Below, one piece after another: positions 16,661-50,410 of a stretch of DNA of 50,410 bases. Made by a program: the position numbers and the translations under genes. A model generated the notes under the pieces. That model did no database searches and was not told the origin of the DNA. It saw only the letters and a list, made by a program, of their open reading frames with translations. Every line of letters starts with the position of its first letter. The first letter of the stretch is position 1. Source of the DNA: Octopus bimaculoides. Its lineage: Eukaryota. The stretch spans positions 137,932,169-137,982,578 of the forward strand of contig NC_068983.1 of NCBI RefSeq assembly GCF_001194135.2, given 5' to 3'.

Positions 16661-18530
16661 AACATCAATGTAGTTTACTATGAAGAAGGAAAACATCTTA
16701 TAAAACAATAAGCAATTGTTTTATAAGATGTGCTGAATTCTGTTTTAACTATGCAGTGTTAAGAGACTCTAGCTTATTGTAAGGGATTAGCTGATAAAAT
16801 TTAGAGAATAAGTTACATATACAACATCATAAATACATCCCATGCATTTGTGAATGGTAAGAATAGGGGAAAGAAGAAAAACATATAAGTGAGAAATGGC
16901 TGAATGTATAGTTTGTAAAAAGAAATCATGTACTGCTATGAAATCCAACTTCTATAATTGATAGAGTAGTAAGGTGGAAGCTAAGAAAAACCGAAGCAAT
17001 ATATACAACACACGCTTGGTGAAAACTCAGTAAGCGAGCGCTGACATCAGCTTAACACAACTAACTTTAATGAATAAGAAATTTAAATATCTTAAAAATG
17101 TAAACCTATATGTTCGTGCATGAGTAGCGTTGCGTTACTATATTTGTATCGACGAGTGCACTGTAGCTGCATATATTAAAAAGAAATCTTAGTATCAGTT
17201 TAATAGTCCGAAACATTACAATCTTATAAACAGTAACTAAACATTCAAGGTCTAACGATTCTGAATTTTTATAAATTCATTAAAATATTAATTAACAGGT
17301 TTCCACTATCAGTAGACATTTTAGATATATAGTCTTCATGAGCTTTATGAGTTTTTCTTCATTTATTCAGATATGGGTATTTCAAGTTCCTAGATTTTTT
17401 AAGGATATTTTTTCATTCTTAAGAGTTTTATGAAAGCGACTCTTGCAAATGAGTGGAATATATTTCCGGTGACATTAATCGTTAAAAGGTTAACTGTACT
17501 AGAGAGAGGAGAAGGGAGAAATTTGACATTATCGCCTAGGCTTCTCTCAATGTCTTGTCTAGTGACATGTTTAAATATAATAGCTGCTCTGGACAGTTAT
17601 GAAAGTCAGTTGGCCATTTAACATAAATTCAATTAAGATTTATACAACGAGTTGTTTAATCCGCCTTGAGCCATCATGGGTGAATTATATTCACTGAAAA
17701 AACGTAACATGCCTGTGTGATTCATAAACTACATAACATTGAAAATGATGACCAGAACAAAAGTCCCACTCTGTTTTTACTATTTGTTTTTAAGCTTGTT
17801 CACCGAGTAGGAGATTGGTTTACAGAGGCACTGCAACTATAACCAAGAAAATCATTTATGCAGACACATGAATCGGCTCACAAGTTCATATGTCCCTCTA
17901 CCACTCTCTCTCTTCCCTTTACACCGGCGTGGTCACATGCTTCCGGTCAATAATCCTTTCCTTCCTTGGCTATCGCCGAGCAAACGCACGCACCACTCGT
18001 CCCCTTCAAGTTCGTGCTTCACAGCGTTCATACACACATAATTTTTCTCGTCTGGCCGTAAAGCCTTTTCTGTTTGTTTTCCTGCCTTGTTTTTTGTCCG
18101 CCACTACATTCCTCCATGGCTAGATTTAATTTGCGTATACAAATTTAATCTGCGGTCCATGGGATGAGCCGTTGTAACGATGCGTCCTGCCCGAAGCTCG
18201 TNNNNNNNNNNNNNNNNNNNNNNNNNNNNNNNNNNNNNNNNNNNNNNNNNNNNNNNNNNNNNNNNNNNNNNNNNNNNNNNNNNNNNNNNNNNNNNNNNNN
18301 NNNNNNNNNNNNNNNNNNNNNNNNNNNNNNNNNNNNNNNNNNNNNNNNNNNNNNNNNNNNNNNNNNNNNNNNNNNNNNNNNNNNNNNNNNNNNNNNNNNN
18401 NNNNNNNNNNNNNNNNNNNNNNNNNNNNNNNNNNNNNNNNNNNNNNNNNNNNNNNNNNNNNNNNNNNNNNNNNNNNNNNNNNNNNNNNNNNNNNNNNNNN
18501 NNNNNNNNNNNNNNNNNNNNNNNNNNNNNN

Positions 18531-23504: not shown

Positions 23505-23747
23505 AATATATGTAGCAGCGTCAGTGTCAAGCAGTAATGAAAAATAAACGAGCTGTAGGTTAGTTAAAATATGTTTGTAACATTTTAACTTTTAAAGGCA
23601 AATTCACAGCAGTTGCCCTGGAAAAGTTCTTCTCTCTTATGGTAATATATATATATATAAAGAATCTTTCATCTTTTTATAACAGACAAATAAATTATTC
23701 ATACATCTATTTCTTCTCCCTTTTCTTCTTGTTTTTCCCTCAATATA

Positions 23748-24625
23748 TGCAAGGTGTCCCAAAAGACACTGACGGGATTTAATTTTTTATGACTTCCTTA
23801 ACTTTACAAATAAATGCATGAAATTTAGGTACAATATAAAGGACATTTTAAAAATTAATATGCACAAGTCAAATTTTGCAACACAACTACATCACATATG
23901 AAAAATGACATAGCTTAAATGGCAGCCATTTCCGGCTTCGCACGCCCGTGCTCTTTCCAAAACTTGCACCATAACACCCTCAAGAGTTTCAGACCCCATT
24001 TCTATGATTTCTGTATTGTTGTTCCCCTCCAGTTGCACCAGGGTCTCCTGTTTGTTGATGTAAACCCTCTCTTTCAATTATCACCACAAGAAAAAATCCG
24101 GGCTGGTCAAGTCTGGGGAACGTGAAAGCCATTCAAAGTAGACCTCACACATGGTTCCAGCAAGATAGGGCAACTTCTCATACCGCAATAGAAACAATGC
24201 AGTTGCTACGACAGTACTATGGAGCGAGAATAATCTCACGCTATGGCAATGTCTACTGGCCTTCACGTTCCTCAGACTTGACTAGCCCGGATTTTTCTTG
24301 TAGGGATACCCGAAAGAGAGGATTTACTTCAACAAATCGGAAGCCTTGGTGCAACTGAAGGAGGACATCAATAGAGAAATCAGGAAGTCGGGTCTGAAAC
24401 TCTTGAGGGTGTTATGGTGCAAGTTCTGGAAAGAGCACGAGTGTGCAAAGCCGAAAATGGCTGCCATTTAAGCTATGTCATTTTTCATATATGATGTAAT
24501 GGTGTTGCAAAATTTGACTTGTGCATATTAATTTCCATATATCCTTTATATTGTATCAAAATTTCATGCATTTATTTGTAAAGGAAGTTATTAAAAATTG
24601 AAACCCATCAATAACTGTTGGGACA

Positions 24626-24630
<5 letters not shown>
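23748..24630. mobile_element. rosa/DD41D-derived element with two inverted copies of the transposase 3' end plus TIR
   Basis: The left arm (~23748-24138) is the reverse complement of the right arm (~24252-24630). The centre and right arm read WFQQDRATSHTAIETMQLLRQYYGARIISRYGNVYWPSRSSDLTSPD (41 aa between the Ds). Ends are TA-TGCAAGGTGTCCC and GGGACACTG-TA. Confidence 0.88.
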
Positions 24631-24668
<38 letters not shown>

Positions 24669-25979: not shown

Positions 25980-26905
25980 TCGTTATAAGAACAAGACAAA
26001 GAGTGCTGTACTAGTGGAGGAGCAGTGTGGTTTTAGGAGTGGAAGGGGGTGTGCAGATCATACATTTGTAGTAAGGCAGATATGTGAGAAGTTTTTGGCA
26101 AAAGAGAGGGAGATGTATTGGGCCTTTATGGACCTATAGAAGGCATATGACCGAGTCGATATGGATGCAGTGTGGCAAGTGTTGCGGTTGTATGGAGTAG
26201 ATGTTAGATTGTTGAGAGCTGTTCAGTTTTTATAGAGAAAGCCGGGCGTGCGTTAGGGTGCGTGGTGAAGTAAGTGAGTGATTTGATATGAATGTGAGGT
26301 TAAGACAAGGTTGTGTGATGTCTCCGTGGCTGTTAATTTAAATATGGATGGCGTGGTGAGAGAGGTAAATGCTAGAACCTTTGGTAGGGGAGCCCAAATA
26401 GTGGGAGAAAATAGAGAGAAATGGCAGGTGAGTCAGTTGTTGTTTGCTGATGATACAGCACTGGTGGCGGATTCGGAAGAACAACTGAGGAGACTGGTGG
26501 TACAGTTTGGAAGAATGTGTGAGAGGAGGAAACTGAAAGTGAATGTAGCTAAGAGGAAGGTGATGAGATGCTAGAGAGATGGAATGGCTGGTAGGATGGA
26601 TGTGAGTATAAATGGTGAGACGTTAGAAGAGGTGAGTGTTTTTAAGTATCTGGGATCACATGTGACGGCGCATGGGGGATGGCTGAGGAGGTGGGATACA
26701 GAGTGAGGGAGGGGAGCAAGATACATGGAGTTGGGAAAGGTATGCTGAGAGGTAAAAGGTTGAGTGTGAAAGTGAAAAGAGGTGTGTATGAGGGCACGAT
26801 TGTGCCGACCTCGGGGCTGAGAGAAGCAGAAAGGAGGCGACTAGGTGTGTTTGAGATGAGATGTCTGAGAGAGGAAAGCTTTGAGAGTTTGTGGACGAAT
26901 GAGTG
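25980..26905 (+). mobile_element. RTE-like LINE reverse-transcriptase fragment (second family)
   Basis: EEQCGFRSGRGCADHTFVVRQICEK..AFMDL*KAYDRV..LRQGCVMSPWLFN..LLFADDTALVA..FKYLGS..VFEMRCLR; frameshifts and stops present. Confidence 0.92.
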
Positions 26906-27194
26906 GATTTGATGTTGCTCAAAGGGGTACGGAACCAGCCTGATGCGGCGTGGGGGGGGGGAGAGCTAAATCAGCATGTGTTGTTGGGCCCCGCTGCTGA
27001 TATTGGGGGTTGCGTTCAATGACTTGACCCGAACATAGCTTATCGCTTTGAGCTGGGCAATGCTTGGTGTGTGTCTTGTGGCTACTTACTCCTAAAAAAT
27101 AGAGAATAGGCCTGGGTATATAAAAAAATTCAGTTATGATTTTTAGTATATATAAGGGCGTAAAACGAATACACAAAACACAGATGGAGCAACC

Positions 27195-28250: not shown

Positions 28251-29906
28251 TTACATACACACATTGCTGCATGAATATATACATACATATGTAGCTGGCT
28301 ATCTGTGTGCGTGTATTGAATATTCATTCCATTTGCATTCGATATTTAAACAAAAGAAGTTATTTAAGTTGAAATGGGTGCTTAAAATAAAGAATACATT
28401 GCANNNNNNNNNNNNNNNNNNNNNNNNNNNNNNNNNNNNNNNNNNNNNNNNNNNNNNNNNNNNNNNNNNNNNNNNNNNNNNNNNNNNNNNNNNNNNNNNN
28501 NNNNNNNNNNNNNNNNNNNNNNNNNNNNNNNNNNNNNNNNNNNNNNNNNNNNNNNNNNNNNNNNNNNNNNNNNNNNNNNNNNNNNNNNNNNNNNNNNNNN
28601 NNNNNNNNNNNNNNNNNNNNNNNNNNNNNNNNNNNNNNNNNNNNNNNNNNNNNNNNNNNNNNNNNNNNNNNNNNNNNNNNNNNNNNNNNNNNNNNNNNNN
28701 NNNNNNNNNNNNNNNNNNNNNNNNNNNNNNNNNNNNNNNNNNNNNNNNNNNNNNNNNNNNNNNNNNNNNNNNNNNNNNNNNNNNNNNNNNNNNNNNNNNN
28801 NNNNNNNNNNNNNNNNNNNNNNNNNNNNNNNNNNNNNNNNNNNNNNNNNNNNNNNNNNNNNNNNNNTATATATATATATATATATATATATATCTATATC
28901 TATAGTTAGCAATTCCATTTTATCCAAGAATATTTTCATTCCAAAAAGATATGTCTAGACAGTATGGCTGATACTTATCTGTGCGTGTGAATCATTGTAA
29001 TAAAGGGAAGAAAGAAAAGAAAGCTTCTCAATGTATTTAAGTTCATGAATCTGTCTCTGTATTTTCTTTTAAATATGATATCAAACTGGAACTCAAGTTT
29101 TTTTCCCATGAAATCGACAGAAATGATTTTATACAAATGTAATATACTTGAGAAATCTTGTCTGCTATGTTTTAATATTTTATGTCGGTTAACAGAAGTG
29201 ATATTAAAAGTATTTATAATCTTGTTTTCTGTCACAAAAATATGTCTTGCTAAGACTAATTATCAGCAAAAGTTTTATACAGAAGCACTCTTAATTCTCA
29301 ACAGCATTTTGTGTAAATATAACCTTGTTCTGTAGGTGTTTTACATTAATGCACCTAGAGAGTCTTTATCCGCTCTCTCGTCTTCCCACACGCTAAAATG
29401 AGTGTACACATATGTCACAAGAATCTTTTATCAATGTGGTCTTAGATACGTTGCGCCAGAAGAAATGAGAGGATAACCCGAGGGCTGGAACGTCATGGTC
29501 ATAAATCTGCTCGTTTGGAGCTGAACTCAGCAATATAAATGAGTTGTAAATCAGTTAATCGATTTTGACATAGATAAAGTATAGTCAGCTTCGTTGTAGT
29601 CAAAACTCTGCATTCTCATTTAATCAGGATGTTAACAATAAATGATTCAACGGTGTAGACTACACAATTAGCGTATCAAATGAATTGATTCAATGTCAAA
29701 ATCTACTAAAATATCTTTCTATTTCCCCCCATCTTCTCACGGTCTCATTCACAAAACTTCACGCTAATTACTCCTCTATCCGTATTCCCTAGGATTGCAG
29801 CGTTTTAAATACTTTTGAGATCCTCTCCTTATTTTCTTTGACCTTATATCAACTGTTAAATCTCCTTGGACTAAAGAAGAAAAATGTATTAATGTGAAAT
29901 TGAATA

Positions 29907-37430: not shown

Positions 37431-38668
37431 CTTCCGCTTCTTGTGGAAGGGAAGCGTTCCGATGGTTAGGCGATCCATNNNNNNNNNNNNNNNNNNNNNN
37501 NNNNNNNNNNNNNNNNNNNNNNNNNNNNNNNNNNNNNNNNNNNNNNNNNNNNNNNNNNNNNNNNNNNNNNNNNNNNNNNNNNNNNNNNNNNNNNNNNNNN
37601 NNNNNNNNNNNNNNNNNNNNNNNNNNNNNNNNNNNNNNNNNNNNNNNNNNNNNNNNNNNNNNNNNNNNNNNNNNNNNNNNNNNNNNNNNNNNNNNNNNNN
37701 NNNNNNNNNNNNNNNNNNNNNNNNNNNNNNNNNNNNNNNNNNNNNNNNNNNNNNNNNNNNNNNNNNNNNNNNNNNNNNNNNNNNNNNNNNNNNNNNNNNN
37801 NNNNNNNNNNNNNNNNNNNNNNNNNNNNNNNNNNNNNNNNNNNNNNNNNNNNNNNNNNNNNNNNNNNNNNNNNNNNNNNNNNNNNNNNNNNNNNNNNNNN
37901 NNNNNNNNNNNNNNNNNNNNNNNNNNNNNNNNNNNNNNNNNNNNNNNNNNNNNNNNNNNNNNNNNNNNNNNNNNNNNNNNNNNNNNNNNNNNNNNNNNNN
38001 NNNNNNNNNNNNNNNNNNNNNNNNNNNNNNNNNNNNNNNNNNNNNNNNNNNNNNNNNNNNNNNNNNNNNNNNNNNNNNNNNNNNNNNNNNNNNNNNNNNN
38101 NNNNNNNNNNNNNNNNNNNNNNNNNNNNNNNNNNNNNNNNNNNNNNNNNNNNNNNNNNNNNNNNNNNNNNNNNNNNNNNNNNNNNNNNNNNNNNNNNNNN
38201 NNNNNNNNNNNNNNNNNNNNNNNNNNNNNNNNNNNNNNNNNNNNNNNNNNNNNNNNNNNNNNNNNNNNNNNNNNNNNNNNNNNNNNNNNNNNNNNNNNNN
38301 NNNNNNNNNNNNNNNNNNNNNNNNNNNNNNNNNNNNNNNNNNNNNNNNNNNNNNNNNNNNNNNNNNNNNAGAGAGAGAGAGAGAGAGAGAGAGAGAGCAC
38401 TTCGCTCTCATGTGTCTATTCCCTGCTGAGGTTACCATGGTCTTTTCCGTAGGCTTTTCTCTCCATGGATAAACCTAATGTTACCCCATTTTACACAATT
38501 GACATTTTCTGTGATATACGATACCCCACCCCCTTTTTTGTCTTTTTTCTTTCTTTTTTTTTTGCCCCGACCGATCCCTTTTGATCGGATTTTTGTTTTT
38601 TTAAAGAAAAGCTCTACAGTTGTATTTGTCCCCTCTGTGTGCAGCCCTGTGTGGCTAATAAAAGAAAG
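37431..38668 (+). mobile_element. 5'-truncated L1/Tx1-like LINE spanning an assembly gap
   Basis: Starts LFRFLWKGSVPMVRRS (post-RT F.W.G...V.R motif of L1/Tx1 ORF2). After the gap is a 3' UTR with a ccgatc-N6-gatcgg stem-loop and aataaaagaaagtt joined to (ATCT)n. Continuity across the N gap is assumed. Confidence 0.6.
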
Positions 38669-38704
38669 TTATCTATCTATCTATCTATCTACCTACCTAC
38701 CTAC

Positions 38705-38752
<48 letters not shown>

Positions 38753-39019: not shown

Positions 39020-41440
39020 AGAGAGTTACTACAAAAATATGGTTGGACACAACATCAATAGGAACACAACCGAGGAACAGAAAGAAAACGAAGACAGAAG
39101 CTCAACAAGTAAACAGTTCTTTCTAGATGTAGTTATAGAAGAAACCGTAAGTACAAAACTTATTTCTCTTGGAGTCATGAATTGAAATACTGATCTATTT
39201 AACTGCCACAAGAAAAGCGAAACAAACCCCGCTGTGGATATGAATCGATTGAAATCACATTGGGAAGATCTGCATCCAGAATTAAATCGTTTTACTACGC
39301 CAACGAGCAACATTTGTAGAATATAGGAACAAAGTTAGTAACTGTAACTCTATTAAAAAATCGAAGATTAAAATTCTTTCTAACTCTATAAGCAAAAACG
39401 AAAACGTGAATGACGTGAGACCACCACATTCCAACAGATTCCGTAGTGCCTGCCAACCAAGCTACGTTACTGGCTAAAGTAACTGACCACTGTCCCCCTA
39501 CTACGACTATAGTAAATAGTAGGCACAACCGCAACGATTATTGTAGTTGTAGTGGTAGTTAGCATATACTGCTGAAATGTGCCCTTACTGAAATTTTCTG
39601 AGGAAAAAAAACTTTGGCTTTGAAGTACTCTCTCGAGGAGAGAATATTCTCTACCAAAGTAAGTAAAAAACGACCAGACACGGTACTAAAAGCTGTTAAG
39701 GAAATTGTTGGTGAGTATTTACAGCAGTGAGATGATAGATTAAAGCTGATAGATTAAAGCTTGTCTGTATGCTCTGGCTACTACTGCAAAGCAGTACATG
39801 AATGACATTCAAAAAGTGAACAAAACCGAAACAACAAAGAAACTACCACTATGGGTTTTGAAGACAGAGCAAAAAAATTACTGGTTTACAGAAGACCATC
39901 AGCGATGTGATGATGCTTATTGCGTGCGAACAAGCAAATTACTATACGTCTCACCAACAGAAACTAAAGAAGGAGATAGAAATGATGCTTGGAGACAGCA
40001 AAAAGAAGACACTCACTTGCAAATTGATTACCCTCAAGCAGGAGCTAAAAGCTCTCAGTGAGAAACTCCGACCTCAGAAGAGAATAACCGAGAGAAAAAC
40101 AATAAACAAACAAAATTTAACCGGAACCAAGCAGTAGTATGCAGAAACATGAGAGGAAGAGCAGTGAATATATGCTTAAACCACTTCCTCCGGGACAATT
40201 GTGAAATCAATAACATCCTCAACGCTGAACAAGCAGTTGGGAAGAACAGAGTCTGGGGATGTACCGAGCAATTGTTAATCAACAAAACTGTGATGTCAGA
40301 GTTGCGACAGCATAGAAGGAACCTAGTTTCAATGTGGCTAGACTACAAGAAGGCCTTTGATTCTGTTCCCCACTCATGGATGCTAGAAGCCTTTCAATTT
40401 GCTAAAGTTCCAGTGTGAACAGTCAAAGTCATAGCTGACTTGACTTCATCGTGGACTGCCATCTTAAAATCAAACACAAAGAGTGACTGTATTATCATTG
40501 ATAGAATATCGTATCGCAAAGGCATAGTCCAAGGGGACAGCCTCTTTATGATGTTCATTATACTTCCTGTAAACCCCTCATCATACATGTTAAGGAATTC
40601 TGAAGGATATCTCACTGGTTCACAAGGAAACAGGAATACCAACACTACACACTGTTTCTTTGTGGATGACTTAAAACTTTATACAAAGAATATCCATGAG
40701 ATGAAAAAGAGCCTCGACCAAGTTACAACATTCTCAAAGGATGTAAGGTTGGAGTTTGGTCAGGATAAATGTTCTTATATAGTTGTGAAAAGGGGGAAAA
40801 CTGTAAACCAGACTAGCAACATTTTAGTCAATGACTTGATTGTTTCACCTATATCTGACGAAGAATGCTACAGGTATCTAGGGGTGGATGAAAATATATT
40901 TTCCAATGGCGCCTATAATAAAACATGTGTCACTAAAACATATTACAGACAAATAAAGAAAATTTGGACCTCAGAACTCACTGCATTGAATGAAACAATG
41001 ACCCACAATGTGTTTGCAGTGTCAGTACTCGTACCAATATTTAGGCTGATTGATTGGACGCTCGATGAGATCCGAGTTATTGATGTGAAAACCCGGAAAA
41101 TACTAACAAGCACATATAATTTCCACATAAAAAGTGATGTAGACCGCCTCTACCTAAAAGGTAAACAAGGTGGCAGAAGCTTAACATCGATCCAAATGTC
41201 TTTGAATGTCGCATCATATCTCTTCGGCAACATCTTTTAACCACCAAGTGTCGAAGTGCACCCCTTTACCAAGTTTGCAAACATGAGGCTGATAACACCG
41301 TAAGATTTGAGCAACACTCTTTGTCTGATAACCTAGAATACATGCCCAAAGAAGTCGCATGACTCTACCGCAACGTGTTATCAGCTGAAAAGATGAGCGT
41401 GTACGAGCAGAAGACTATGCATGGATATGTTAGTAGAAGT
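39020..41440 (+). mobile_element. R4/Dong-like non-LTR retrotransposon, internally deleted and 3'-truncated
   Basis: N-terminal ..RLKSHWEDLHPE; RT motifs GCTEQLLINK..WLDYKKAFDSVPHSW, GIVQGDSL, HCFFVDDLKLY, FGQDKC, YRYLGV, DRLYL..GGRSL; ends near YEQKTMHGY. Multiple frameshifts. Confidence 0.88.
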
Positions 41441-42324
41441 TATTATTGGCACGAATTATGGCAGCGATGTGACTATTTTTATTCCTAATTGCCAAACCGT
41501 TTGCGTTTTGACCGCTAACAGGTTTCTTTCAACAAACAAGACATAAAGTTTAGTGTACATGCTAGCTTATTGATAGAATACAATCATTGTTTTGAAGATA
41601 GAATACACCATCGTTGTTGCGGTATATTTTGTTATTGACTTCATAACCAAATTTAGGTTTTGGAATTCTATATAAGGTGATATGTTTTCCTTCCATTTAT
41701 TTCGTTTTGTGTAATTAAAGGCGTTGCGATTGCTTCCTTTTCTAGATAAATTGCAAGACGGCGAGAGGGAGTGTGACTTGTCAAGAAAAAGTAAAAATAA
41801 TGAAGTTTACAACTTTTCATTTTAGCATATGATTTTGCAAAACAGAATTAGTCATTTGAAATTTATTCAGTGGCTTGCAGGCTTGTGGTTTCTTGTTGAG
41901 AAGTTTAGCATGCACTTTTATAATATATCATTTATGCATGTTTTATGCATGTTGTGTGCTGTTTGTCGGTTTTCTCTTTACCGATACTTTTTACTGAGAT
42001 GTTCGTCTATTCTGAAGCCTAGGTGCACTTGTTTCATATAATACAATTAGTTGTGGATTCTTTCTGTTTAGAGGATGTTTCTGTTGTTATTGTGTTGGAG
42101 TTTTTCTGTAGAGTATAGTTTGGTAACCAAATTATTTTTGCATCCATATTCACAAACATTAATCTATTTTAAGATCTTTTACAGCGGGTTTCATTTGTGG
42201 GGAGAGTTTAACAGTTCTTATGAGCGAGGATTTCACAAGTAACATTATATATCTTTACGAACACACACACACACACACACACANNNNNNNNNNNNNNNNN
42301 NNNNNNNNNNNNNNNNNNNNNNNN

Positions 42325-43359: not shown

Positions 43360-44354
43360 GAGAGAGTGTACGTGTGTGTGCATGAGGGTGTATGTATTTG
43401 CATCTATCGATATATACACATAGATATGCATATACATACTATTACAAACATACGCACACACATACGCACGCACACACACACACATATGTATATATGAATA
43501 CACCGGTATTCATTTATTTATTTTATTGGCGAACAAAATAGACACGTAATATTTAGTCTGGTTTGGACTAGACAAGTTTAGTAACAACGAAAGACTTCAT
43601 TCTCATCTGTTTTATTTTGAATAATACATGAACATCAAGGAATTTAGTTTTATATGGTTTCTTTTATGTTGATTCCTTTTTTCTTCTTACCTTTTCAAAC
43701 AATTACCTTAAACGACAAGAGAATCGGCTATAAAATAACACATCTAATAAGATTTCGGACCAATAAACTATGGTAATTTTTGCCAAGAGAAATATAATAG
43801 ACAAATAAAACGGTAGACTTTACTTACTATGAAACTACAATGCGTATAGGCTAAGTCGTAAAAAGCAACAAATGGTCACCATGATTTCATCTAGATTATT
43901 TATAAGTATAGATCGTCAGAAATGATGTTTGATAACCTATATGTAGATGTTTACGCAGTGTATATCAATCGGATGCGTATATACAGCTGTATATACGCAT
44001 AACAGACTCGTACGTATCCTCTGCCTCACACGCAAACATTTTACCTCATGTAGATATAGCTAATAACCAAAAAACATAATACTCCATCTATACATGTGTA
44101 CATGCATACACACACACACGCACACATAAAATACATACACATGTACAACCATATAACAGAAAGACCAACGGATAGACAGTGTGTGTGTATGTATGTGTTA
44201 GTGTGTGTGTATAGATATGTGTAAGTACATATATACGTTTACGAATACTTACACACATTTACACACACACACGCACACACACAAACACACACACATACAC
44301 ACACCTTGTCTATCCGTCCTTCCGTCTGTCCGTCTGTCTGTTTGTCTGTCTATC

Positions 44355-45551: not shown

Positions 45552-45674
45552 CCCGATCCCTTTTGATCGGAATTTAACTTTCTTATTTTTCCCCTTTTTT
45601 TCATTTTCGAAAAAAAATCTCTACATTTGTATTTGTCCCCTCTGTGTTCAGCCCTGTGTGGCCAATAAAGAAAG

Positions 45675-45676
<2 letters not shown>
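45552..45676 (+). mobile_element. Second copy of the Tx1-like 3' end, followed by (ATCT)n
   Basis: ccgatcccttttgatcgg...ctctaca.ttgtatttgtcccctctgtg..cagccctgtgtggc.aataaa.gaaagtt matches about 38571-38668; followed by (ATCT)n to about 45747. Confidence 0.75.
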
Positions 45677-45746
<70 letters not shown>

Positions 45747-46315: not shown

Positions 46316-47441
46316 ACGCACACGCACACGCACACACAGATATTCAGGAATATGTCTGCACATAAAAATAGACATATATATATATATATACATATACATA
46401 TACATATATAATTATACATACATCTATCTATCTATGTATCTATCTATATATGTTTATATATTTATATAAATATGCATACAGATATATTTGAATATTAGCA
46501 TTGGACTTGTGCGTGTGTGTATGTGTGTGTATGTGTGTGTGTGCTTGCGTATGGTTGTGTAAGTGTTTGTGTGTATGTGTGTGGGTTCGTGTTTGTATCT
46601 ATATGTATTCGTATTTGCGTGTTGTTTCGTATCTCATATTCGAAATTCACATCTCAGCTACCGCTCATTCATCTGTGTATTCCTTCGCCCTTTCTATACA
46701 TCACTGAATTTCTATCTATTAGTTATTCGTGTTTTATCGAAGTTTCTGGTTGATGTGCCAGTGAATATTTATGTTTCTGAACGCAATCATTTTCATGAAT
46801 TTACGTTCAGACAATTCATGATGGACATTGCTATGCTTTTTAACAAAATACTTTCCATGGATTATTTTACACATAGATTGCATTTTATCCCTTGTCTTTC
46901 CCGCCTTCTTTAACAGGCATGTTATATATTCTAATGCATAGACAGTTACATGCAGGCTAATTAGAGGTCATAATAATTAAAGGTCATTTATTATTTTATA
47001 TTTCTTTTTCAGCTTTTACTGGCAAAATCTCTTTATGCGCTGTTCAAAGCGGTGCTCCATCATAAGCTTAGCTTGTGATAACTGAAACAAAGTAACTAAA
47101 GACCTACAGTCAGAAGGACTTACCCAGTGAAAAATAGCTATCTTGGATGTGCAGTATAGGAAGTAGGATGAAATCCGTTCATCGTTCTGCCAGTGACCCG
47201 ATAACATTCTAATTTTACCATGCTTATATTTTGCTAACAAATATTACGCTATTGAACTAAGCGCAAAGCTAAAAGATTCATAATATGGATTATATTATAA
47301 CGTAATCTAACATACAAGATTGCTAATAAGCCAATGTTGTAACAAAAAAAAAAAAATGCCTCGGTTCTACGCATGAGCCATTATGCGAAGTAGAAGAAAT
47401 GTGAGGCTTTATTTCTTGGAACAAAGACATAAAAGATATGC

Positions 47442-47592
47442 AGGCGTAGCTGTGCAGTAAGAAGTTTGCTTCTCAACCATATGATTCCGGGTTCAGTACC
47501 ACAGCATAGCACCTTGGGCAAGTGTCTTATGCTACAGCCTCGGGCCGACTAAAACCTTATGAGTTGATTTGGTAGATGGAAACTGAAAGAAG

Positions 47593-47661
<69 letters not shown>

Positions 47662-47925
47662 ATGCACACGCACACACACATATAAATATGCATATGTCCA
47701 TGTGTGGGTGTATTCGTGTCTGCACTTGTCCCCCACCGCCACTTAACAACCGGTACTGGTGCGCGTTCGTCCTCGTAAACTAGCGGTTCAGCAAAAGAGA
47801 CCGATAGAATAAGTACTTGGCTTCAAAAAAATAAATCCTGGAATCGATTTGTTCGGCTAAGACCCTTCAGGGCGGTGCTCTAGGATGGCCACAATCAAAT
47901 GACCGAAACAAAATAAAAATAAAAG
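47442..47925 (+). mobile_element. tRNA-derived SINE (second family) with an internal (CA)n expansion
   Basis: caggcgtagctgtgcagtaag (A-box-like), gggttcagtacc (B-box-like), gcaccttgggcaagtgtc core, (CA)n at about 47595-47680, 3' body and A-rich tail. Confidence 0.8.
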
Positions 47926-47994
47926 ATGAAAGATGTATAATATATATAAACACGCATACACATATATTTGGTTTTTATATTTAGCTTGCAGGAT

Positions 47995-48270
47995 TCTCAA
48001 TCTGGGTGGGAACCTCCTACAATTGATCCCGTACGTGTTGGCCTCAGAGGACGTAAAACTATGGTCGTAAAACTATGCCTTCCATCTCATCCGCCTTATG
48101 CGGTTAATCATTTTCTCTAGAAGCATTTTCCTATAAAGCTTGGAATATTCTTTGTTGAATAACCGATGTCGTAAAATTCCTTGATATCTGAGAGCTAGAG
48201 GCTTTCGTGAATATGTTGAAGCGCGTTGTGCTGCCACTGCATTTAAGCGGCACCTGTACAACCACAGGTT
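47995..48270 (-). pseudogene. Penelope-like element N-terminal ORF fragment
   Basis: LYRKMLLEKMINRIRRMRWKA*FY..NTYGINCRRFPP resembles the K.LI.K....IRRMRWKAFF....TYGFKS...PP segment I associate with Penelope-like ORFs. Confidence 0.6.
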
Positions 48271-48461
48271 CTCTTTTAGGGTTCCGGAAAAACGTTACGT
48301 TACGTCCAATCAATTACAATTGTACGTTTCTCCGATTAGCAAGTACAATTCTCGCCTTTGAAAATTTCACAGTATATTGTAAAAGAATATGTTATTCATA
48401 CATTATATACATAAATGAATTATATAATTTTTTTCATATTTATAATCCATAGTTTTTCATA

Positions 48462-50230
48462 TTTATAATCCATAATTCATCCACACGCGTTTATAATTCA
48501 TAATTCTTCCGATGAGCCGCTGTTGCTAAATGCAAAGATGTGTTAATTCTGCACCTAAATCGATCAATAATTCCTCAGAGCAACTACACTGCGAACAATG
48601 TAGGACAAAGAACTATCAGGGTATAGTACTAAACTGCCCACTTCTATTCAAAGCCAGTAATCGGTGAAAGGAAATATAGTACTTATAAAATGTAAATCAC
48701 ATAAGGTTGAGATGGTATTAAAACATGAAACGGCATGACTTTCTACTGTAGTTTTACTGTACTAGACTAAAATTGATAAAAATGGATGAGACAAATATAT
48801 TCCAAGTAGTACCAAAATATATCATCATTTAGGTCAGACATATTGCTTGCACTAATACCTATAGAGAAGTCATTGGCGTAGAAGACAGACTAGTTAATTA
48901 AAGTTAGAAAGAGAAAAATAATCTACGATTTAATTCTATTTATGAGACTGTAATCTGTTGATGAGAAAATATTTCAAAATTAAGCTAAGAAGAATTAAAT
49001 GAATTCAGTGTGTATGGTAGGATTTAAAAAAACAAAAAACAATTATTAAGAAAGAAAGAACTGAAAAGTTCCTCAATAAATAAAGTACAACTGATTAAAT
49101 TAATAAATCGATGAGAGAGAAGTAAAATGCTAGAAAATTAAAGATGTTTAAGTGTAGTAAGATAACTAAATGCATCGCTTTAAGAATTACTTATGATAAC
49201 GCACAATTTTAAAACCATTAAAACCAAGGATATTGATGAAAAGCAAATAAGAGAATATACTATGAGTAAAAGATAACAGTAATACTAGCGCTAGTATTAC
49301 TATCATTCTTATACCAGAAGGTACTGAATTTTAAAATTTAATTTAATTTCATTAATGATATAATGTTATTATTAATTTTTACTCATACTATATTCTCTTA
49401 TTTGGTTTTCATCAACATCCTTGGTTTTAATGGTTTTAAAATTGTTTGTATCTTGATTATCATAAGTAATTAAGGTGATGCATTTAGTTATCTTACTACT
49501 CTTAACTATCTTTAATTTTCTAGTATTTTAATTCTCTCCCATCGATTTATTAATTTAATCAGTTGTACTTTATCTATTGAGGAACTTTTCAGTTCTTTCT
49601 TTCTCAATCAGCGTTTTTTTTCTTAAATCCTACCATACATACTGAAATCATCTCATTCTTCTTAGTTTAATTTTGAAATATTTTCTCATCAACGGATTAC
49701 AGTCTCATAAATAGAATTAAATCACAGATCATTTTTCTCTTTCTAACTTTAATTATCTAGTCTGTCTTCTACGCCAATGACTTCTCTATAGGTATCAGTG
49801 TTAGCAATTTATCTGAGCTAAATGATAATATATTTTGGAACTACTTGGAATATATTTGTGTCATCTATTTTTATCAATTTTAGACTAGGACAAAAAAAAG
49901 TTTAGCTACAGTAGAAAGTCATGCCGTTTCATTTTGTAACACCACCTCAGCCTTATGGGATTTACATTTTATAAGAATTATATTTCCCGTTAAACCATTA
50001 CTGACTTTGGATAGAAGTGGGCAGTTTACTACTATATCCTGATAGTTCTATGTTCTACGATATTCGCAGTGTGGTTGCTCCGAGGAAGATGCACGAGCGT
50101 TGGTTTTCTAGATCTATGTAATACTCTTCTCGGTTAATTACAGGACGATTTAAGTGCAGAATTAACGCATCAGTGTATTACTTAACACCGGCACATTTGA
50201 AACGTGCGCAGGCGAATTATGGATTATAAA
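48462..50230. repeat. Long degenerate inverted repeat (fold-back palindrome)
   Basis: 48571-49271 pairs with 49377-50087 (e.g. catgaaacggcatgactttctactgtag vs ctacagtagaaagtcatgccgtttcat). Outer matches: 48541-48562 with ~50146-50167, and 48462-48478 with 50214-50230. Confidence 0.95.
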
Positions 50231-50410
50231 TTAAGAATAAAAAATATATAGTTCTCCATTCTTCTTTGTGTTTTAGATATGTATGTATGCATGCATGTAC
50301 TTATGCATGTGTGTATCTATATATGTATGAATGTATGTGTCTGTGTATATATATGTATGCATGTCTATATATACATATATATACATATACATGTATATAT
50401 ATATATATAT

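What the first reader, a model, noticed from the sequence alone, without database searches (positions are those of the whole stretch)
48462..50230. ~1.8-kb fold-back palindrome that may originally have had no spacer
Two ~700-bp AT-rich, non-coding arms (48571-49271 and 49377-50087) are about 85-90% identical by eye, with further matching blocks out to 48462/50230 and a weaker match to about 48416/50253. The apparent 105-bp spacer contains a perfect loop-less palindrome, agtaatactagc|gctagtattact (49278-49301, axis 49289/49290). The right arm has two blocks missing from the left (~75 bp at 49302-49376 and ~55 bp at 50088-50145). The simplest reading is one spacer-less inverted duplication centred at 49289/49290, later stabilised by deletions in the left arm, as expected from hairpin-capped break repair, fold-back replication or a hairpin-ended element. 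No TSD or transposase is evident. If transcribed it would give ~700 bp of dsRNA, a strong candidate ADAR-editing or endo-siRNA substrate, notable if the host is a coleoid cephalopod.
Basis: partly seen in the sequence, partly recalled or inferred. Interest (0 to 1): 0.75.

Follow-up and report, generated by a model that had tools for sequence, protein, structure and literature searches.

The report
Decaying 1.8-kb hairpin-forming inverted repeat
About 0.9 kb of non-coding animal (probably octopus) DNA is followed head-to-head by its own reverse-complement copy, now about 89% alike; it is real, but it looks like the worn remnant of one ordinary fold-back duplication, and nothing here shows that it is transcribed or has a function.

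Summary
Arms 48417-49289 and 49290-50254 align as an inverted repeat at 89% identity (732 of 819 aligned bases; core 48571-49271 / 49377-50087). A perfect 24-nt palindrome with no spacer lies at 49278-49301. The right arm carries extra blocks at 49302-49376 and about 50088-50145.

The arms differ mostly by substitutions (48 transitions, 39 transversions). They have no ORF over 52 codons, no Pfam match in any frame, no arrays of sub-repeats and no non-palindromic target-site duplication. No second copy occurs in the 50-kb window.

My best reading is a single old fold-back inverted duplication of non-coding DNA that is now decaying neutrally. I could not decide whether it arose in place or is a fold-back-type transposon. 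The run finder was closed, and every outside search for further copies came back empty.

A spacer-less origin is possible but not shown. A later break repair at the hairpin tip explains the 24-mer equally well.

A second inverted repeat in the same window (23743-24635) has the same layout and derives from a transposase gene. Published work reports that octopus genomes have an unusually high share of loci able to form long dsRNA. The structure is therefore ordinary. It would be a plausible ADAR substrate if transcribed, and an unlikely endo-siRNA source in a mollusc. Interest is low.

The parts
48417..49289 (.). Left arm of the inverted repeat. Well-aligned core 48571-49271; confident alignment ends at 49284. 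The last 12 nt are the left half of the central palindrome.
   Evidence: 89.4% identity to the reverse complement of the right arm. Identity rises from 82% at the outer end to 93-95% nearer the centre.
49290..50254 (.). Right arm, including the central block that the left arm lacks. Well-aligned core 49377-50087.
49278..49301 (.). Perfect 24-nt palindrome with no spacer, AGTAATACTAGC|GCTAGTATTACT, axis 49289/49290.
   Evidence: 0 of 2000 shuffles of the centre reach 12+12. It folds as a small stem within the multi-branched centre (DNA z-score -7.3 for 49240-49400).
49302..49376 (.). Single-copy central block present only on the right side: 62 nt (49302-49363) or 75 nt, depending on the alignment. 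It acts as the loop of the hairpin.
   Evidence: (75-column gap), plus direct reading of the sequence.
50088..50145 (.). Right-arm-only block, seen as 32-nt and 18-nt gaps in the left arm around a short matching GATC..A..AA segment.
48430..48475 (+). 23-nt tandem duplication (TTTTTCATATTTATAATCCATAG x2) present only in the left arm. The right arm has one copy at about 50215-50240.
   Evidence: family D4, 96%; TRF period 23, 2.0 copies.
48378..48416 (.). Possible weak outward extension of the left arm into (CATA)n-like low-complexity DNA, pairing with 50255-50307.
   Evidence: lenient local alignment only. Low-complexity sequence, so this is weak.
50255..50410 (.). Right flank: (TATG)n/(TA)n microsatellite running to the end of the window. 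Its first ~50 nt pair weakly with 48378-48416.

Best explanation
This is an old, non-coding inverted duplication made in a single event. About 0.9 kb of local AT-rich DNA, reaching into the edge of a (TATG)n microsatellite, was copied in reverse-complement orientation and joined head-to-head to the original. The likely mechanism is strand-switching (fold-back) DNA synthesis during repair of a break or a stalled fork.

Since then both arms have drifted neutrally to about 90% identity (K2P about 0.10 in the core). They have picked up small and medium indels, mainly at the slippage-prone outer ends and at the hairpin tip.

The centre is now a 62-104-nt asymmetric loop with a 24-nt perfect palindrome at its left edge. 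That palindrome is either the surviving original axis or the scar of a later break repair at the tip.

Shown: the structure, its co-extensive arms, the substitution pattern, the absence of coding capacity and its ability to fold. Inferred: the single event, its mechanism, formation in place and the lack of function. The only consequence I predict is that a transcript running through it would form about 750 bp of imperfect dsRNA. In an octopus such RNA would be edited by ADAR like the many similar loci.
For: The arms are co-extensive at both the outer and inner ends, at 89.4% identity. They differ by 48 transitions, 39 transversions and about 15 indels, with 12 of 87 mismatches of CpG type. That is evolutionary decay, not sequencing error.

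The arms have no ORF over 52 codons and no Pfam match in six frames, and there is no Rfam family in the window.

No non-palindromic TSD of 4 nt or more was found, and no sub-repeat arrays. The outer boundary is fuzzy: it fades into microsatellite-like DNA on both sides rather than stopping sharply as a transposon end does. No other copy or fragment of the arm occurs in 50 kb.

A single-copy asymmetric centre is what fold-back duplications leave behind (PMC3907307). Folding.
Against: The copy number in the host genome could not be measured, so a transposon family is not excluded. A transposon-derived inverted repeat with the same geometry lies 25 kb away. In animal genomes most kb-scale inverted repeats are built from repeats (PMC5625713). 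Identity is uneven along the arms (82% outer against 93-95% inner, Fisher p = 0.015), which a single event followed by uniform decay does not predict. It needs faster decay of low-complexity DNA or gene conversion near the centre. No empty-site allele or orthologue was available.
Confidence: 0.45

Rival explanations
1. It is a fold-back-type non-autonomous DNA transposon. Both arms would be inverted copies of one long non-coding end of a mobile element, as in Galileo or Foldback elements or in the transposase-derived inverted repeat at 23743-24635. The unit either inserted here whole or was rearranged in place.
For: There is a precedent in the same window: arms 23743-24143 / 24251-24635, 88.5% identity, 107-nt single-copy centre. 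Its spacer plus right arm encode a transposase C-terminus, 70% identical (E 3.5e-31) to a protein that UniRef names 'Transposase'. Geometry and arm divergence nearly match the target. The window is rich in transposon debris. Octopus genomes hold many loci able to form dsRNA, mostly repeat-derived (PMC5625713).
Against: No TSD and no recognisable terminal motif. The outer boundary is fuzzy rather than sharp, unlike the 23.7-kb element. There are no tandem sub-repeats, no transposase remnant in six frames and no second copy or fragment in 50 kb. Two arm-derived k-mers and the arm ORFs found nothing in the metagenome or protein collections, although those collections probably do not hold the host genome.
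Confidence: 0.3
2. It is two copies of one retroposon-like repeat lying head-to-head, each with a (TATG)n 3' tail at its outer end. They would come either from two independent insertions or from one insertion in which reverse transcriptase snapped back on its own cDNA.
For: Both outer ends run into (CATA)n/(TATG)n-like DNA. Another repeat in the window carries a microsatellite tail: 38590-38744 and 45597-45746, each ending in (TATC)n. LINE fragments are common here.
Against: Independent 5'-truncated insertions would not share the same truncation point, yet the two arms meet at one axis and are co-extensive. No reverse-transcriptase remnant is found in 965 nt. The microsatellite match on the left is only about 40 nt and weak. 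No TSD can be checked because the window ends inside the right-hand microsatellite. The snap-back variant is my own inference, with no documented family behind it.
Confidence: 0.12
3. It is a selected structured-RNA locus: a hairpin-RNA gene producing small RNAs, or a dedicated ADAR target or sponge.
For: It has strong folding potential: 752 inter-arm pairs and uninterrupted helices of 69-77 bp. Octopus shows the strongest hyper-editing signal among the species surveyed (PMC5625713).
Against: Arm divergence looks neutral, with mismatches and bulges along the whole stem and no sign of compensatory maintenance. There is no Rfam match. A survey of 32 mollusc species, including O. bimaculoides, found no dedicated endo-siRNA pathway (PMC12479628). 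Editing of such loci is generic rather than locus-specific (PMC5625713). Transcription could not be tested.
Confidence: 0.05
4. It is an assembly or sequencing artefact: a chimeric fold-back read, or a missed hairpin adapter.
For: The window is a gapped scaffold with runs of N, and the structure lies near the window's end beside a microsatellite.
Against: Artefactual fold-backs give near-identical arms, or arms differing by random 1-nt indels. Here there are 87 substitutions with transitions in excess, CpG-type changes, and blocks of 7-75 nt present in only one arm. There are no Ns in 48200-50410.
Confidence: 0.03

Closest known systems
Fold-back inversions (inverted duplications formed by intrastrand fold-back priming or template switching at a break; PMC3907307, PMC10622511, PMC7467729)
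   Same: Head-to-head inverted copy of adjacent sequence. A short single-copy asymmetric centre matches the expected fold-back loop. No TSD and no transposase.
   Different: The described cases are large (kb to Mb), recent, somatic or de novo, and usually tied to terminal deletions or dicentric chromosomes. This one is a 0.9-kb interstitial, fixed, roughly 10%-diverged germ-line example. The diagnostic inverted microhomology at the spacer edge can no longer be read.
Short templated fold-back insertions at repaired double-strand breaks, mostly about 5-34 bp (PMC11724301), and palindromic P-nucleotide tracts from off-centre hairpin opening (the latter from my own knowledge)
   Same: The 12+12-nt perfect palindrome falls in this size range. 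It sits exactly at a junction between arm sequence and loop sequence, next to a 62-75-nt arm-to-arm length difference.
   Different: In the yeast system the fold-back uses a pre-existing microhomology and leaves a loop; here there is no loop at all. No experimental link exists for this locus.
Foldback-like transposons (Drosophila FB; Galileo of the P superfamily) and palindromic MITEs such as the frog Harbinger-derived repeat mentioned in PMC5625713
   Same: The unit is made almost wholly of two long inverted arms with a short middle, is non-coding, and forms a hairpin.
   Different: No TSD, no tandem sub-repeats in the arms, no defined terminal motif, no other copies seen and no autonomous partner. 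The features given for FB and Galileo come from my own knowledge, not from a tool.
The transposase-derived inverted repeat in the same window (23743-24635)
   Same: Same architecture: two arms plus a single-copy centre of about 100 nt that is contiguous with the right arm. Nearly the same arm identity (88.5% against 89.4%).
   Different: That one has sharp ends beside (TA)n and recognisable transposase coding sequence. The target has neither.
Repeat-derived long dsRNA substrates of ADAR hyper-editing (PMC5625713)
   Same: A long, nearly perfect intramolecular duplex, in a genome type reported to be exceptionally rich in such loci.
   Different: Neither transcription nor editing of this locus was tested.

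Membership tests
Foldback / Galileo-type foldback transposons | Element consists mainly of two long terminal inverted repeats with a short middle | tested here: met
   Arms of 868-965 nt and a centre of 62-104 nt.
Foldback / Galileo-type foldback transposons | Target-site duplication flanking the outer ends (7-9 bp in the named families; from my own knowledge) | tested here: not met
   Scanning all boundary pairs with at least 10/12 terminal complementarity and exact direct repeats of 4-10 nt gave only self-complementary words (TATA, TTATAA, TTAA, AATT) that are part of the inverted repeat itself. Caveat: the locus is old and the ends are AT-rich, so a decayed TSD or a TA dinucleotide cannot be excluded.
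Foldback / Galileo-type foldback transposons | Arms built of tandem sub-repeats (FB proper) | tested here: not met
   The only tandem feature is one 23-nt unit x2, in the left arm only.
Foldback / Galileo-type foldback transposons | Multiple dispersed copies in the genome, with a related autonomous element | not testable with these tools
   No host genome was available. There is no second copy in the 50-kb window. Metagenome k-mer scans and a protein search of the arm ORFs were empty, and 7 exact-ORF look-ups were not on record.
Fold-back inverted duplication (break- or replication-based) | Inverted copy directly adjoining its template, with a single-copy spacer at the centre | tested here: met
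   49302-49363/76 is present once and is contiguous with the right arm.
Fold-back inverted duplication (break- or replication-based) | Short inverted microhomology at the spacer/duplication boundary (PMC3907307) | tested here: inconclusive
   The inner ends of the arms are AT-rich and about 10% diverged. The alignment end can be placed anywhere from 49272/49377 to 49284/49367, so any microhomology can no longer be recognised.
Fold-back inverted duplication (break- or replication-based) | An ancestral or orthologous site carries only one arm, contiguous with both flanks | not testable with these tools
   No related genome or population data could be reached.
   12+12 nt are perfect. By my own count on the sequence, the next 12 nt match at only 7 of 12 positions, after which 62-75 nt have no partner. 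This fits either an off-centre deletion or a later local event. At 89% identity, 12 straight matches have a probability of about 0.25 (my calculation).
ADAR hyper-edited dsRNA locus | Long, nearly perfect intramolecular duplex | tested here: met
   MFE -1022 kcal/mol, 752 inter-arm pairs, longest uninterrupted helix 69-77 bp.
ADAR hyper-edited dsRNA locus | Transcribed, with clustered A-to-G mismatches in RNA reads | not testable with these tools
Hairpin-RNA / endo-siRNA locus | Host has a dedicated siRNA pathway, and roughly 21-nt small RNAs map to the arms | not testable with these tools
   No small-RNA data could be reached. The literature reports no dedicated endo-siRNA pathway in molluscs, including O. 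bimaculoides (PMC12479628).

The most novel reading that the evidence does not exclude
The 24-nt perfect core is the surviving original axis of a truly spacer-less germ-line palindrome. That palindrome would have been made by replication of a hairpin-capped chromosome break and then made tolerable by a 62-75-nt deletion just off-centre. This would be a fixed natural example, in a cephalopod, of the palindrome formation and stabilisation pathway otherwise known from yeast, transgenes and tumours.
Probability: 0.3. Interest if true: 0.4.

Novelty: new member of a known kind. Interest (0 to 1): 0.2.

Why it matters
As it stands, very little. Long local inverted repeats are a common feature of animal genomes. 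Octopus is reported to have an exceptionally high fraction of loci able to form long dsRNA, and the strongest hyper-editing signal among the species surveyed (PMC5625713). This window alone holds two such structures.

The locus could serve as one clean case for two questions. First, do such inverted repeats arise in place by fold-back repair, or do they spread as fold-back transposons? Comparison with sister species and a copy-number count would answer that. Second, what happens at the tip of a long palindrome over evolutionary time? The perfect 24-mer next to an asymmetric block bears on that. Neither question is long-standing or uniquely testable here.

Tried and rejected

2. Independent assemblies and host identity through exact-protein look-ups of seven window ORFs: none on record.

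3. Other copies of the arm. Two conserved arm k-mers (22 and 25 nt) against JGI metagenome contigs gave 0 hits. A concatenate of six arm ORFs against 5.8 billion proteins gave 0 hits. These collections evidently lack the host genome, so the negatives say little.

4. Decayed coding sequence in the arms: a six-frame Pfam scan gave only sub-threshold noise (AcnX E 0.035, RnaseA E 0.023), which I rejected.

5. Rfam scan of the whole window: nothing.

6. TSD search: only palindromic words internal to the inverted repeat.

7. Direct identification of the second inverted repeat's coding part failed by Pfam, by PDB sequence search and by comparison with the window's mariner ORF. It succeeded only through the large protein search. 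Even then the family is named 'Transposase' by UniRef with only a sub-threshold DDE_3 match, so I do not assign it to a superfamily.

8. A look-up of the contig carrying the second-listed RT relative (P0002) returned an anonymous ENA assembly (ERZ25067561), which did not help with host identity.

9. A missed hairpin-adapter artefact was considered and rejected from the kind of differences between the arms.

10. Bacterial/archaeal genome, viral, phage, plasmid and E. coli collections were not searched, because they are irrelevant to an animal locus.

Full report
**Observation**

An ungapped scan of 47000-50410 found a nested series of complementary blocks, running from 49203-49287/49361-45 outward to 48421-48454/50215-50248.

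A gapped alignment joins everything into two arms, 48417-49284 and 49367-50254, with 732 of 819 aligned bases identical (89.4%) and about 15 indel events.

The perfect palindrome AGTAATACTAGC|GCTAGTATTACT lies at 49278-49301 with its axis at 49289/49290. It is the strongest symmetry axis in the centre, and 0 of 2000 shuffles of the 104-nt centre produced anything as good.

Both right-arm-only blocks are confirmed: 49302-49376, and 32+18 nt within about 50088-50145. The left arm has extras of its own: a 23-nt tandem duplication at 48430-48475 and a 16-nt block.

As RNA, 48417-50254 folds to -1022 kcal/mol, against -350 +/- 15 for shuffles. It forms 752 inter-arm pairs and uninterrupted helices of 69-77 bp. 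The tool's own fold of 48580-50079 gives the same long hairpin, with a multi-branched tip in which the 24-mer forms its own small stem.

**Nature of the arms**

The arms differ by 48 transitions and 39 transversions, and 12 of the 87 mismatches are of CpG-transition type. The A>G and G>A counts are balanced at 16 and 15. This is evolutionary drift (K2P 0.099 in the core). It is not the pattern of a chimeric read or a missed hairpin adapter, which would give identical arms or random single-base indels. The region contains no Ns. I therefore reject an artefact.

The arms are non-coding. The longest stop-free stretch is 52 codons. Six-frame translations of 49290-50260 match no Pfam family above noise, and Rfam finds nothing in the whole window.

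Apart from the single 23-nt doublet, the arms contain no tandem sub-repeat arrays.

A scan of all plausible boundary pairs found no target-site duplication of 4 nt or more. The only hits were self-complementary words belonging to the inverted repeat itself.

Identity is uneven along the arms: 82% in the outermost 100 aligned bases and 93-95% nearer the centre (Fisher p = 0.015). With lenient scoring the complementarity fades outward into (CATA)n-like DNA at 48378-48416 / 50255-50307. The outer boundary is therefore fuzzy, not sharp.

**Context**

The window is a gapped animal scaffold, full of microsatellites and transposon debris:
- mariner-type transposase fragments (PF01359, E 6.6e-24 at 2684-3037)
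- a reverse-transcriptase fragment at 40440-41240 (RVT_1)
- a G-rich stretch at 26000-27000 that reads to me like another RT fragment on the + strand; I did not test it

The best named relative of the 40440-41240 RT fragment is an Octopus sinensis protein at 54% identity. An octopod host is therefore likely but not proven. No other copy or fragment of the arm occurs in the 50 kb, although the window has very few internal repeats of any kind.

**A second inverted repeat in the window**

Arms 23743-24143 and 24251-24635 are 88.5% identical around a 107-nt single-copy centre. Read on the + strand, the centre plus the right arm encode, across frameshifts, the C-terminus of a transposase. It is 70% identical (E 3.5e-31) to a crab protein that UniRef names 'Transposase'. 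The Pfam evidence for that protein is only a sub-threshold DDE_3 match.

The left arm is thus an inverted copy of the 3' part of a DNA transposon, coding sequence included. The 'spacer' is simply the stretch of original sequence that was not copied. This element has sharp ends beside (TA)n.

It shows that fold-back derivatives with centres of about 100 nt form in this genome. It also shows what a transposon-derived one looks like, and the target lacks both of its hallmarks: sharp ends and coding remnants.

**Origin**

Four boundaries coincide: the two outer ends, and the two inner ends meeting at one axis. One event therefore made the structure. Two independent insertions would not share truncation points.

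What I could not decide is whether the copied DNA was ordinary local sequence or the end of a mobile element. That needs the copy number in the host genome.

On the internal evidence I favour an in-place fold-back duplication at 0.45. That evidence is the fuzzy boundary running into a microsatellite that continues on the right, the absence of a TSD, terminal motif, sub-repeats and coding remnant, and the asymmetric single-copy centre of the kind fold-back events leave (PMC3907307). A fold-back-type transposon gets 0.30, a retroposon pair or snap-back 0.12, a selected RNA gene 0.05 and an artefact 0.03.

**The centre**

Every left-arm base up to the axis aligns to the right arm if one gap of 62-75 nt is placed 12 nt from the axis. 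At 89% identity, 12 straight matches have a probability of about 0.25 (my calculation).

Three things keep it from being the preferred reading:
- Documented fold-back duplications, and the neighbouring transposon-derived inverted repeat, have a single-copy loop from the start (PMC3907307).
- Short templated inverted insertions, mostly about 5-34 bp, are a known product of break repair (PMC11724301). The tip of a long hairpin is a likely place for breaks. The 12-nt inverted copy and the adjacent length difference could therefore be one later repair event.
- Isolated perfect palindromes of 20 and 28 nt occur elsewhere in the window with no larger symmetry around them (6907-6926 and 43973-44000). 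Some local process makes such palindromes in this genome. At about 2 per 47 kb, one landing by pure chance in a 104-nt centre has a probability of about 0.4%, so the 24-mer is linked to the inverted repeat one way or the other.

I put the spacer-less origin at about 0.3. Only an outgroup can settle it. The direction of all the indels is likewise unpolarised.

**Function**

Nothing indicates selection. Mismatches and bulges are spread along the stem, and the divergence looks neutral.

If a transcript runs through the locus it would form long imperfect dsRNA. Porath et al. report that in metazoans most hyper-editing sits in such structures. They also report that Octopus bimaculoides has both the strongest hyper-editing signal and an exceptionally high fraction (4.4 x 10^-3) of loci able to form long, nearly perfect dsRNA (PMC5625713). 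The locus would therefore be one of very many ADAR substrates, not a special one.

A survey of 32 mollusc species, including O. bimaculoides, found no dedicated endo-siRNA pathway (PMC12479628). Transcription, editing and small RNAs could not be tested here.

**Verdict**

This is an ordinary, old, decaying inverted duplication: a new member of a known kind and of low interest. Its one mildly interesting open detail is the perfect 24-mer at the hairpin tip.

Noticed in passing
window 23743-24635: A second long inverted repeat: arms 23743-24143 / 24251-24635, 88.5% identical, with a 107-nt single-copy centre. The centre plus the right arm encode a frameshifted transposase C-terminus, 70% identical (E 3.5e-31) to a Petrolisthes cinctipes protein that UniRef names 'Transposase'. 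The left arm is an inverted copy of the element's 3' end, coding part included. The ends are sharp and lie beside (TA)n.
   Followed up: yes
window 6907-6926 and 43973-44000: Two isolated perfect palindromes with no spacer and non-repetitive sequence: TGATTCAATC|GATTGAATCA, and a 28-mer with half-site ATGCGTATATACAG. Neither has any larger symmetry around it. They may be scars of hairpin-mediated repair or transposon excision; their origin is unknown.
   Followed up: partly
window 38590-38744 and 45597-45746: A direct repeat pair, 155 nt at 90% identity. Each copy is a conserved ~75-nt unit followed by a (TATC)n microsatellite, which looks like the 3' end of a retroposon with a microsatellite tail.
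   Followed up: no
window 2684-3037, 11295-11687, 40440-41240, 26000-27000: Transposon debris: mariner-type transposase fragments (PF01359, E 6.6e-24 and a weak 0.0027); a reverse-transcriptase fragment (RVT_1) whose best named relative is Octopus sinensis LOC115227337 at 54% identity; and a G-rich stretch (GC 0.48, GC skew +0.59) that I read as another LINE RT fragment on the + strand but did not test.
   Followed up: partly
window ~7419-7691, ~18200-18530, ~28400-28866, ~37480-38370, ~42284-42324: Runs of N (assembly gaps), each bordered by (AC)n, (TA)n, (AG)n or (TCTA)n microsatellites. The window is a gapped scaffold whose gaps sit in simple repeats. These runs also create spurious long 'repeats' and 'ORFs' in mechanical scans.
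   Followed up: no
L001 (ENA ERZ25067561, contig ctg54374_33x_l, 716,906 bp): The contig carrying the second-listed relative (P0002) of the window's RT fragment is a large contig in an anonymous ENA assembly, with bacterial-style ORF calls. It is probably eukaryotic DNA filed among metagenome assemblies. The organism is not stated.
   Followed up: no
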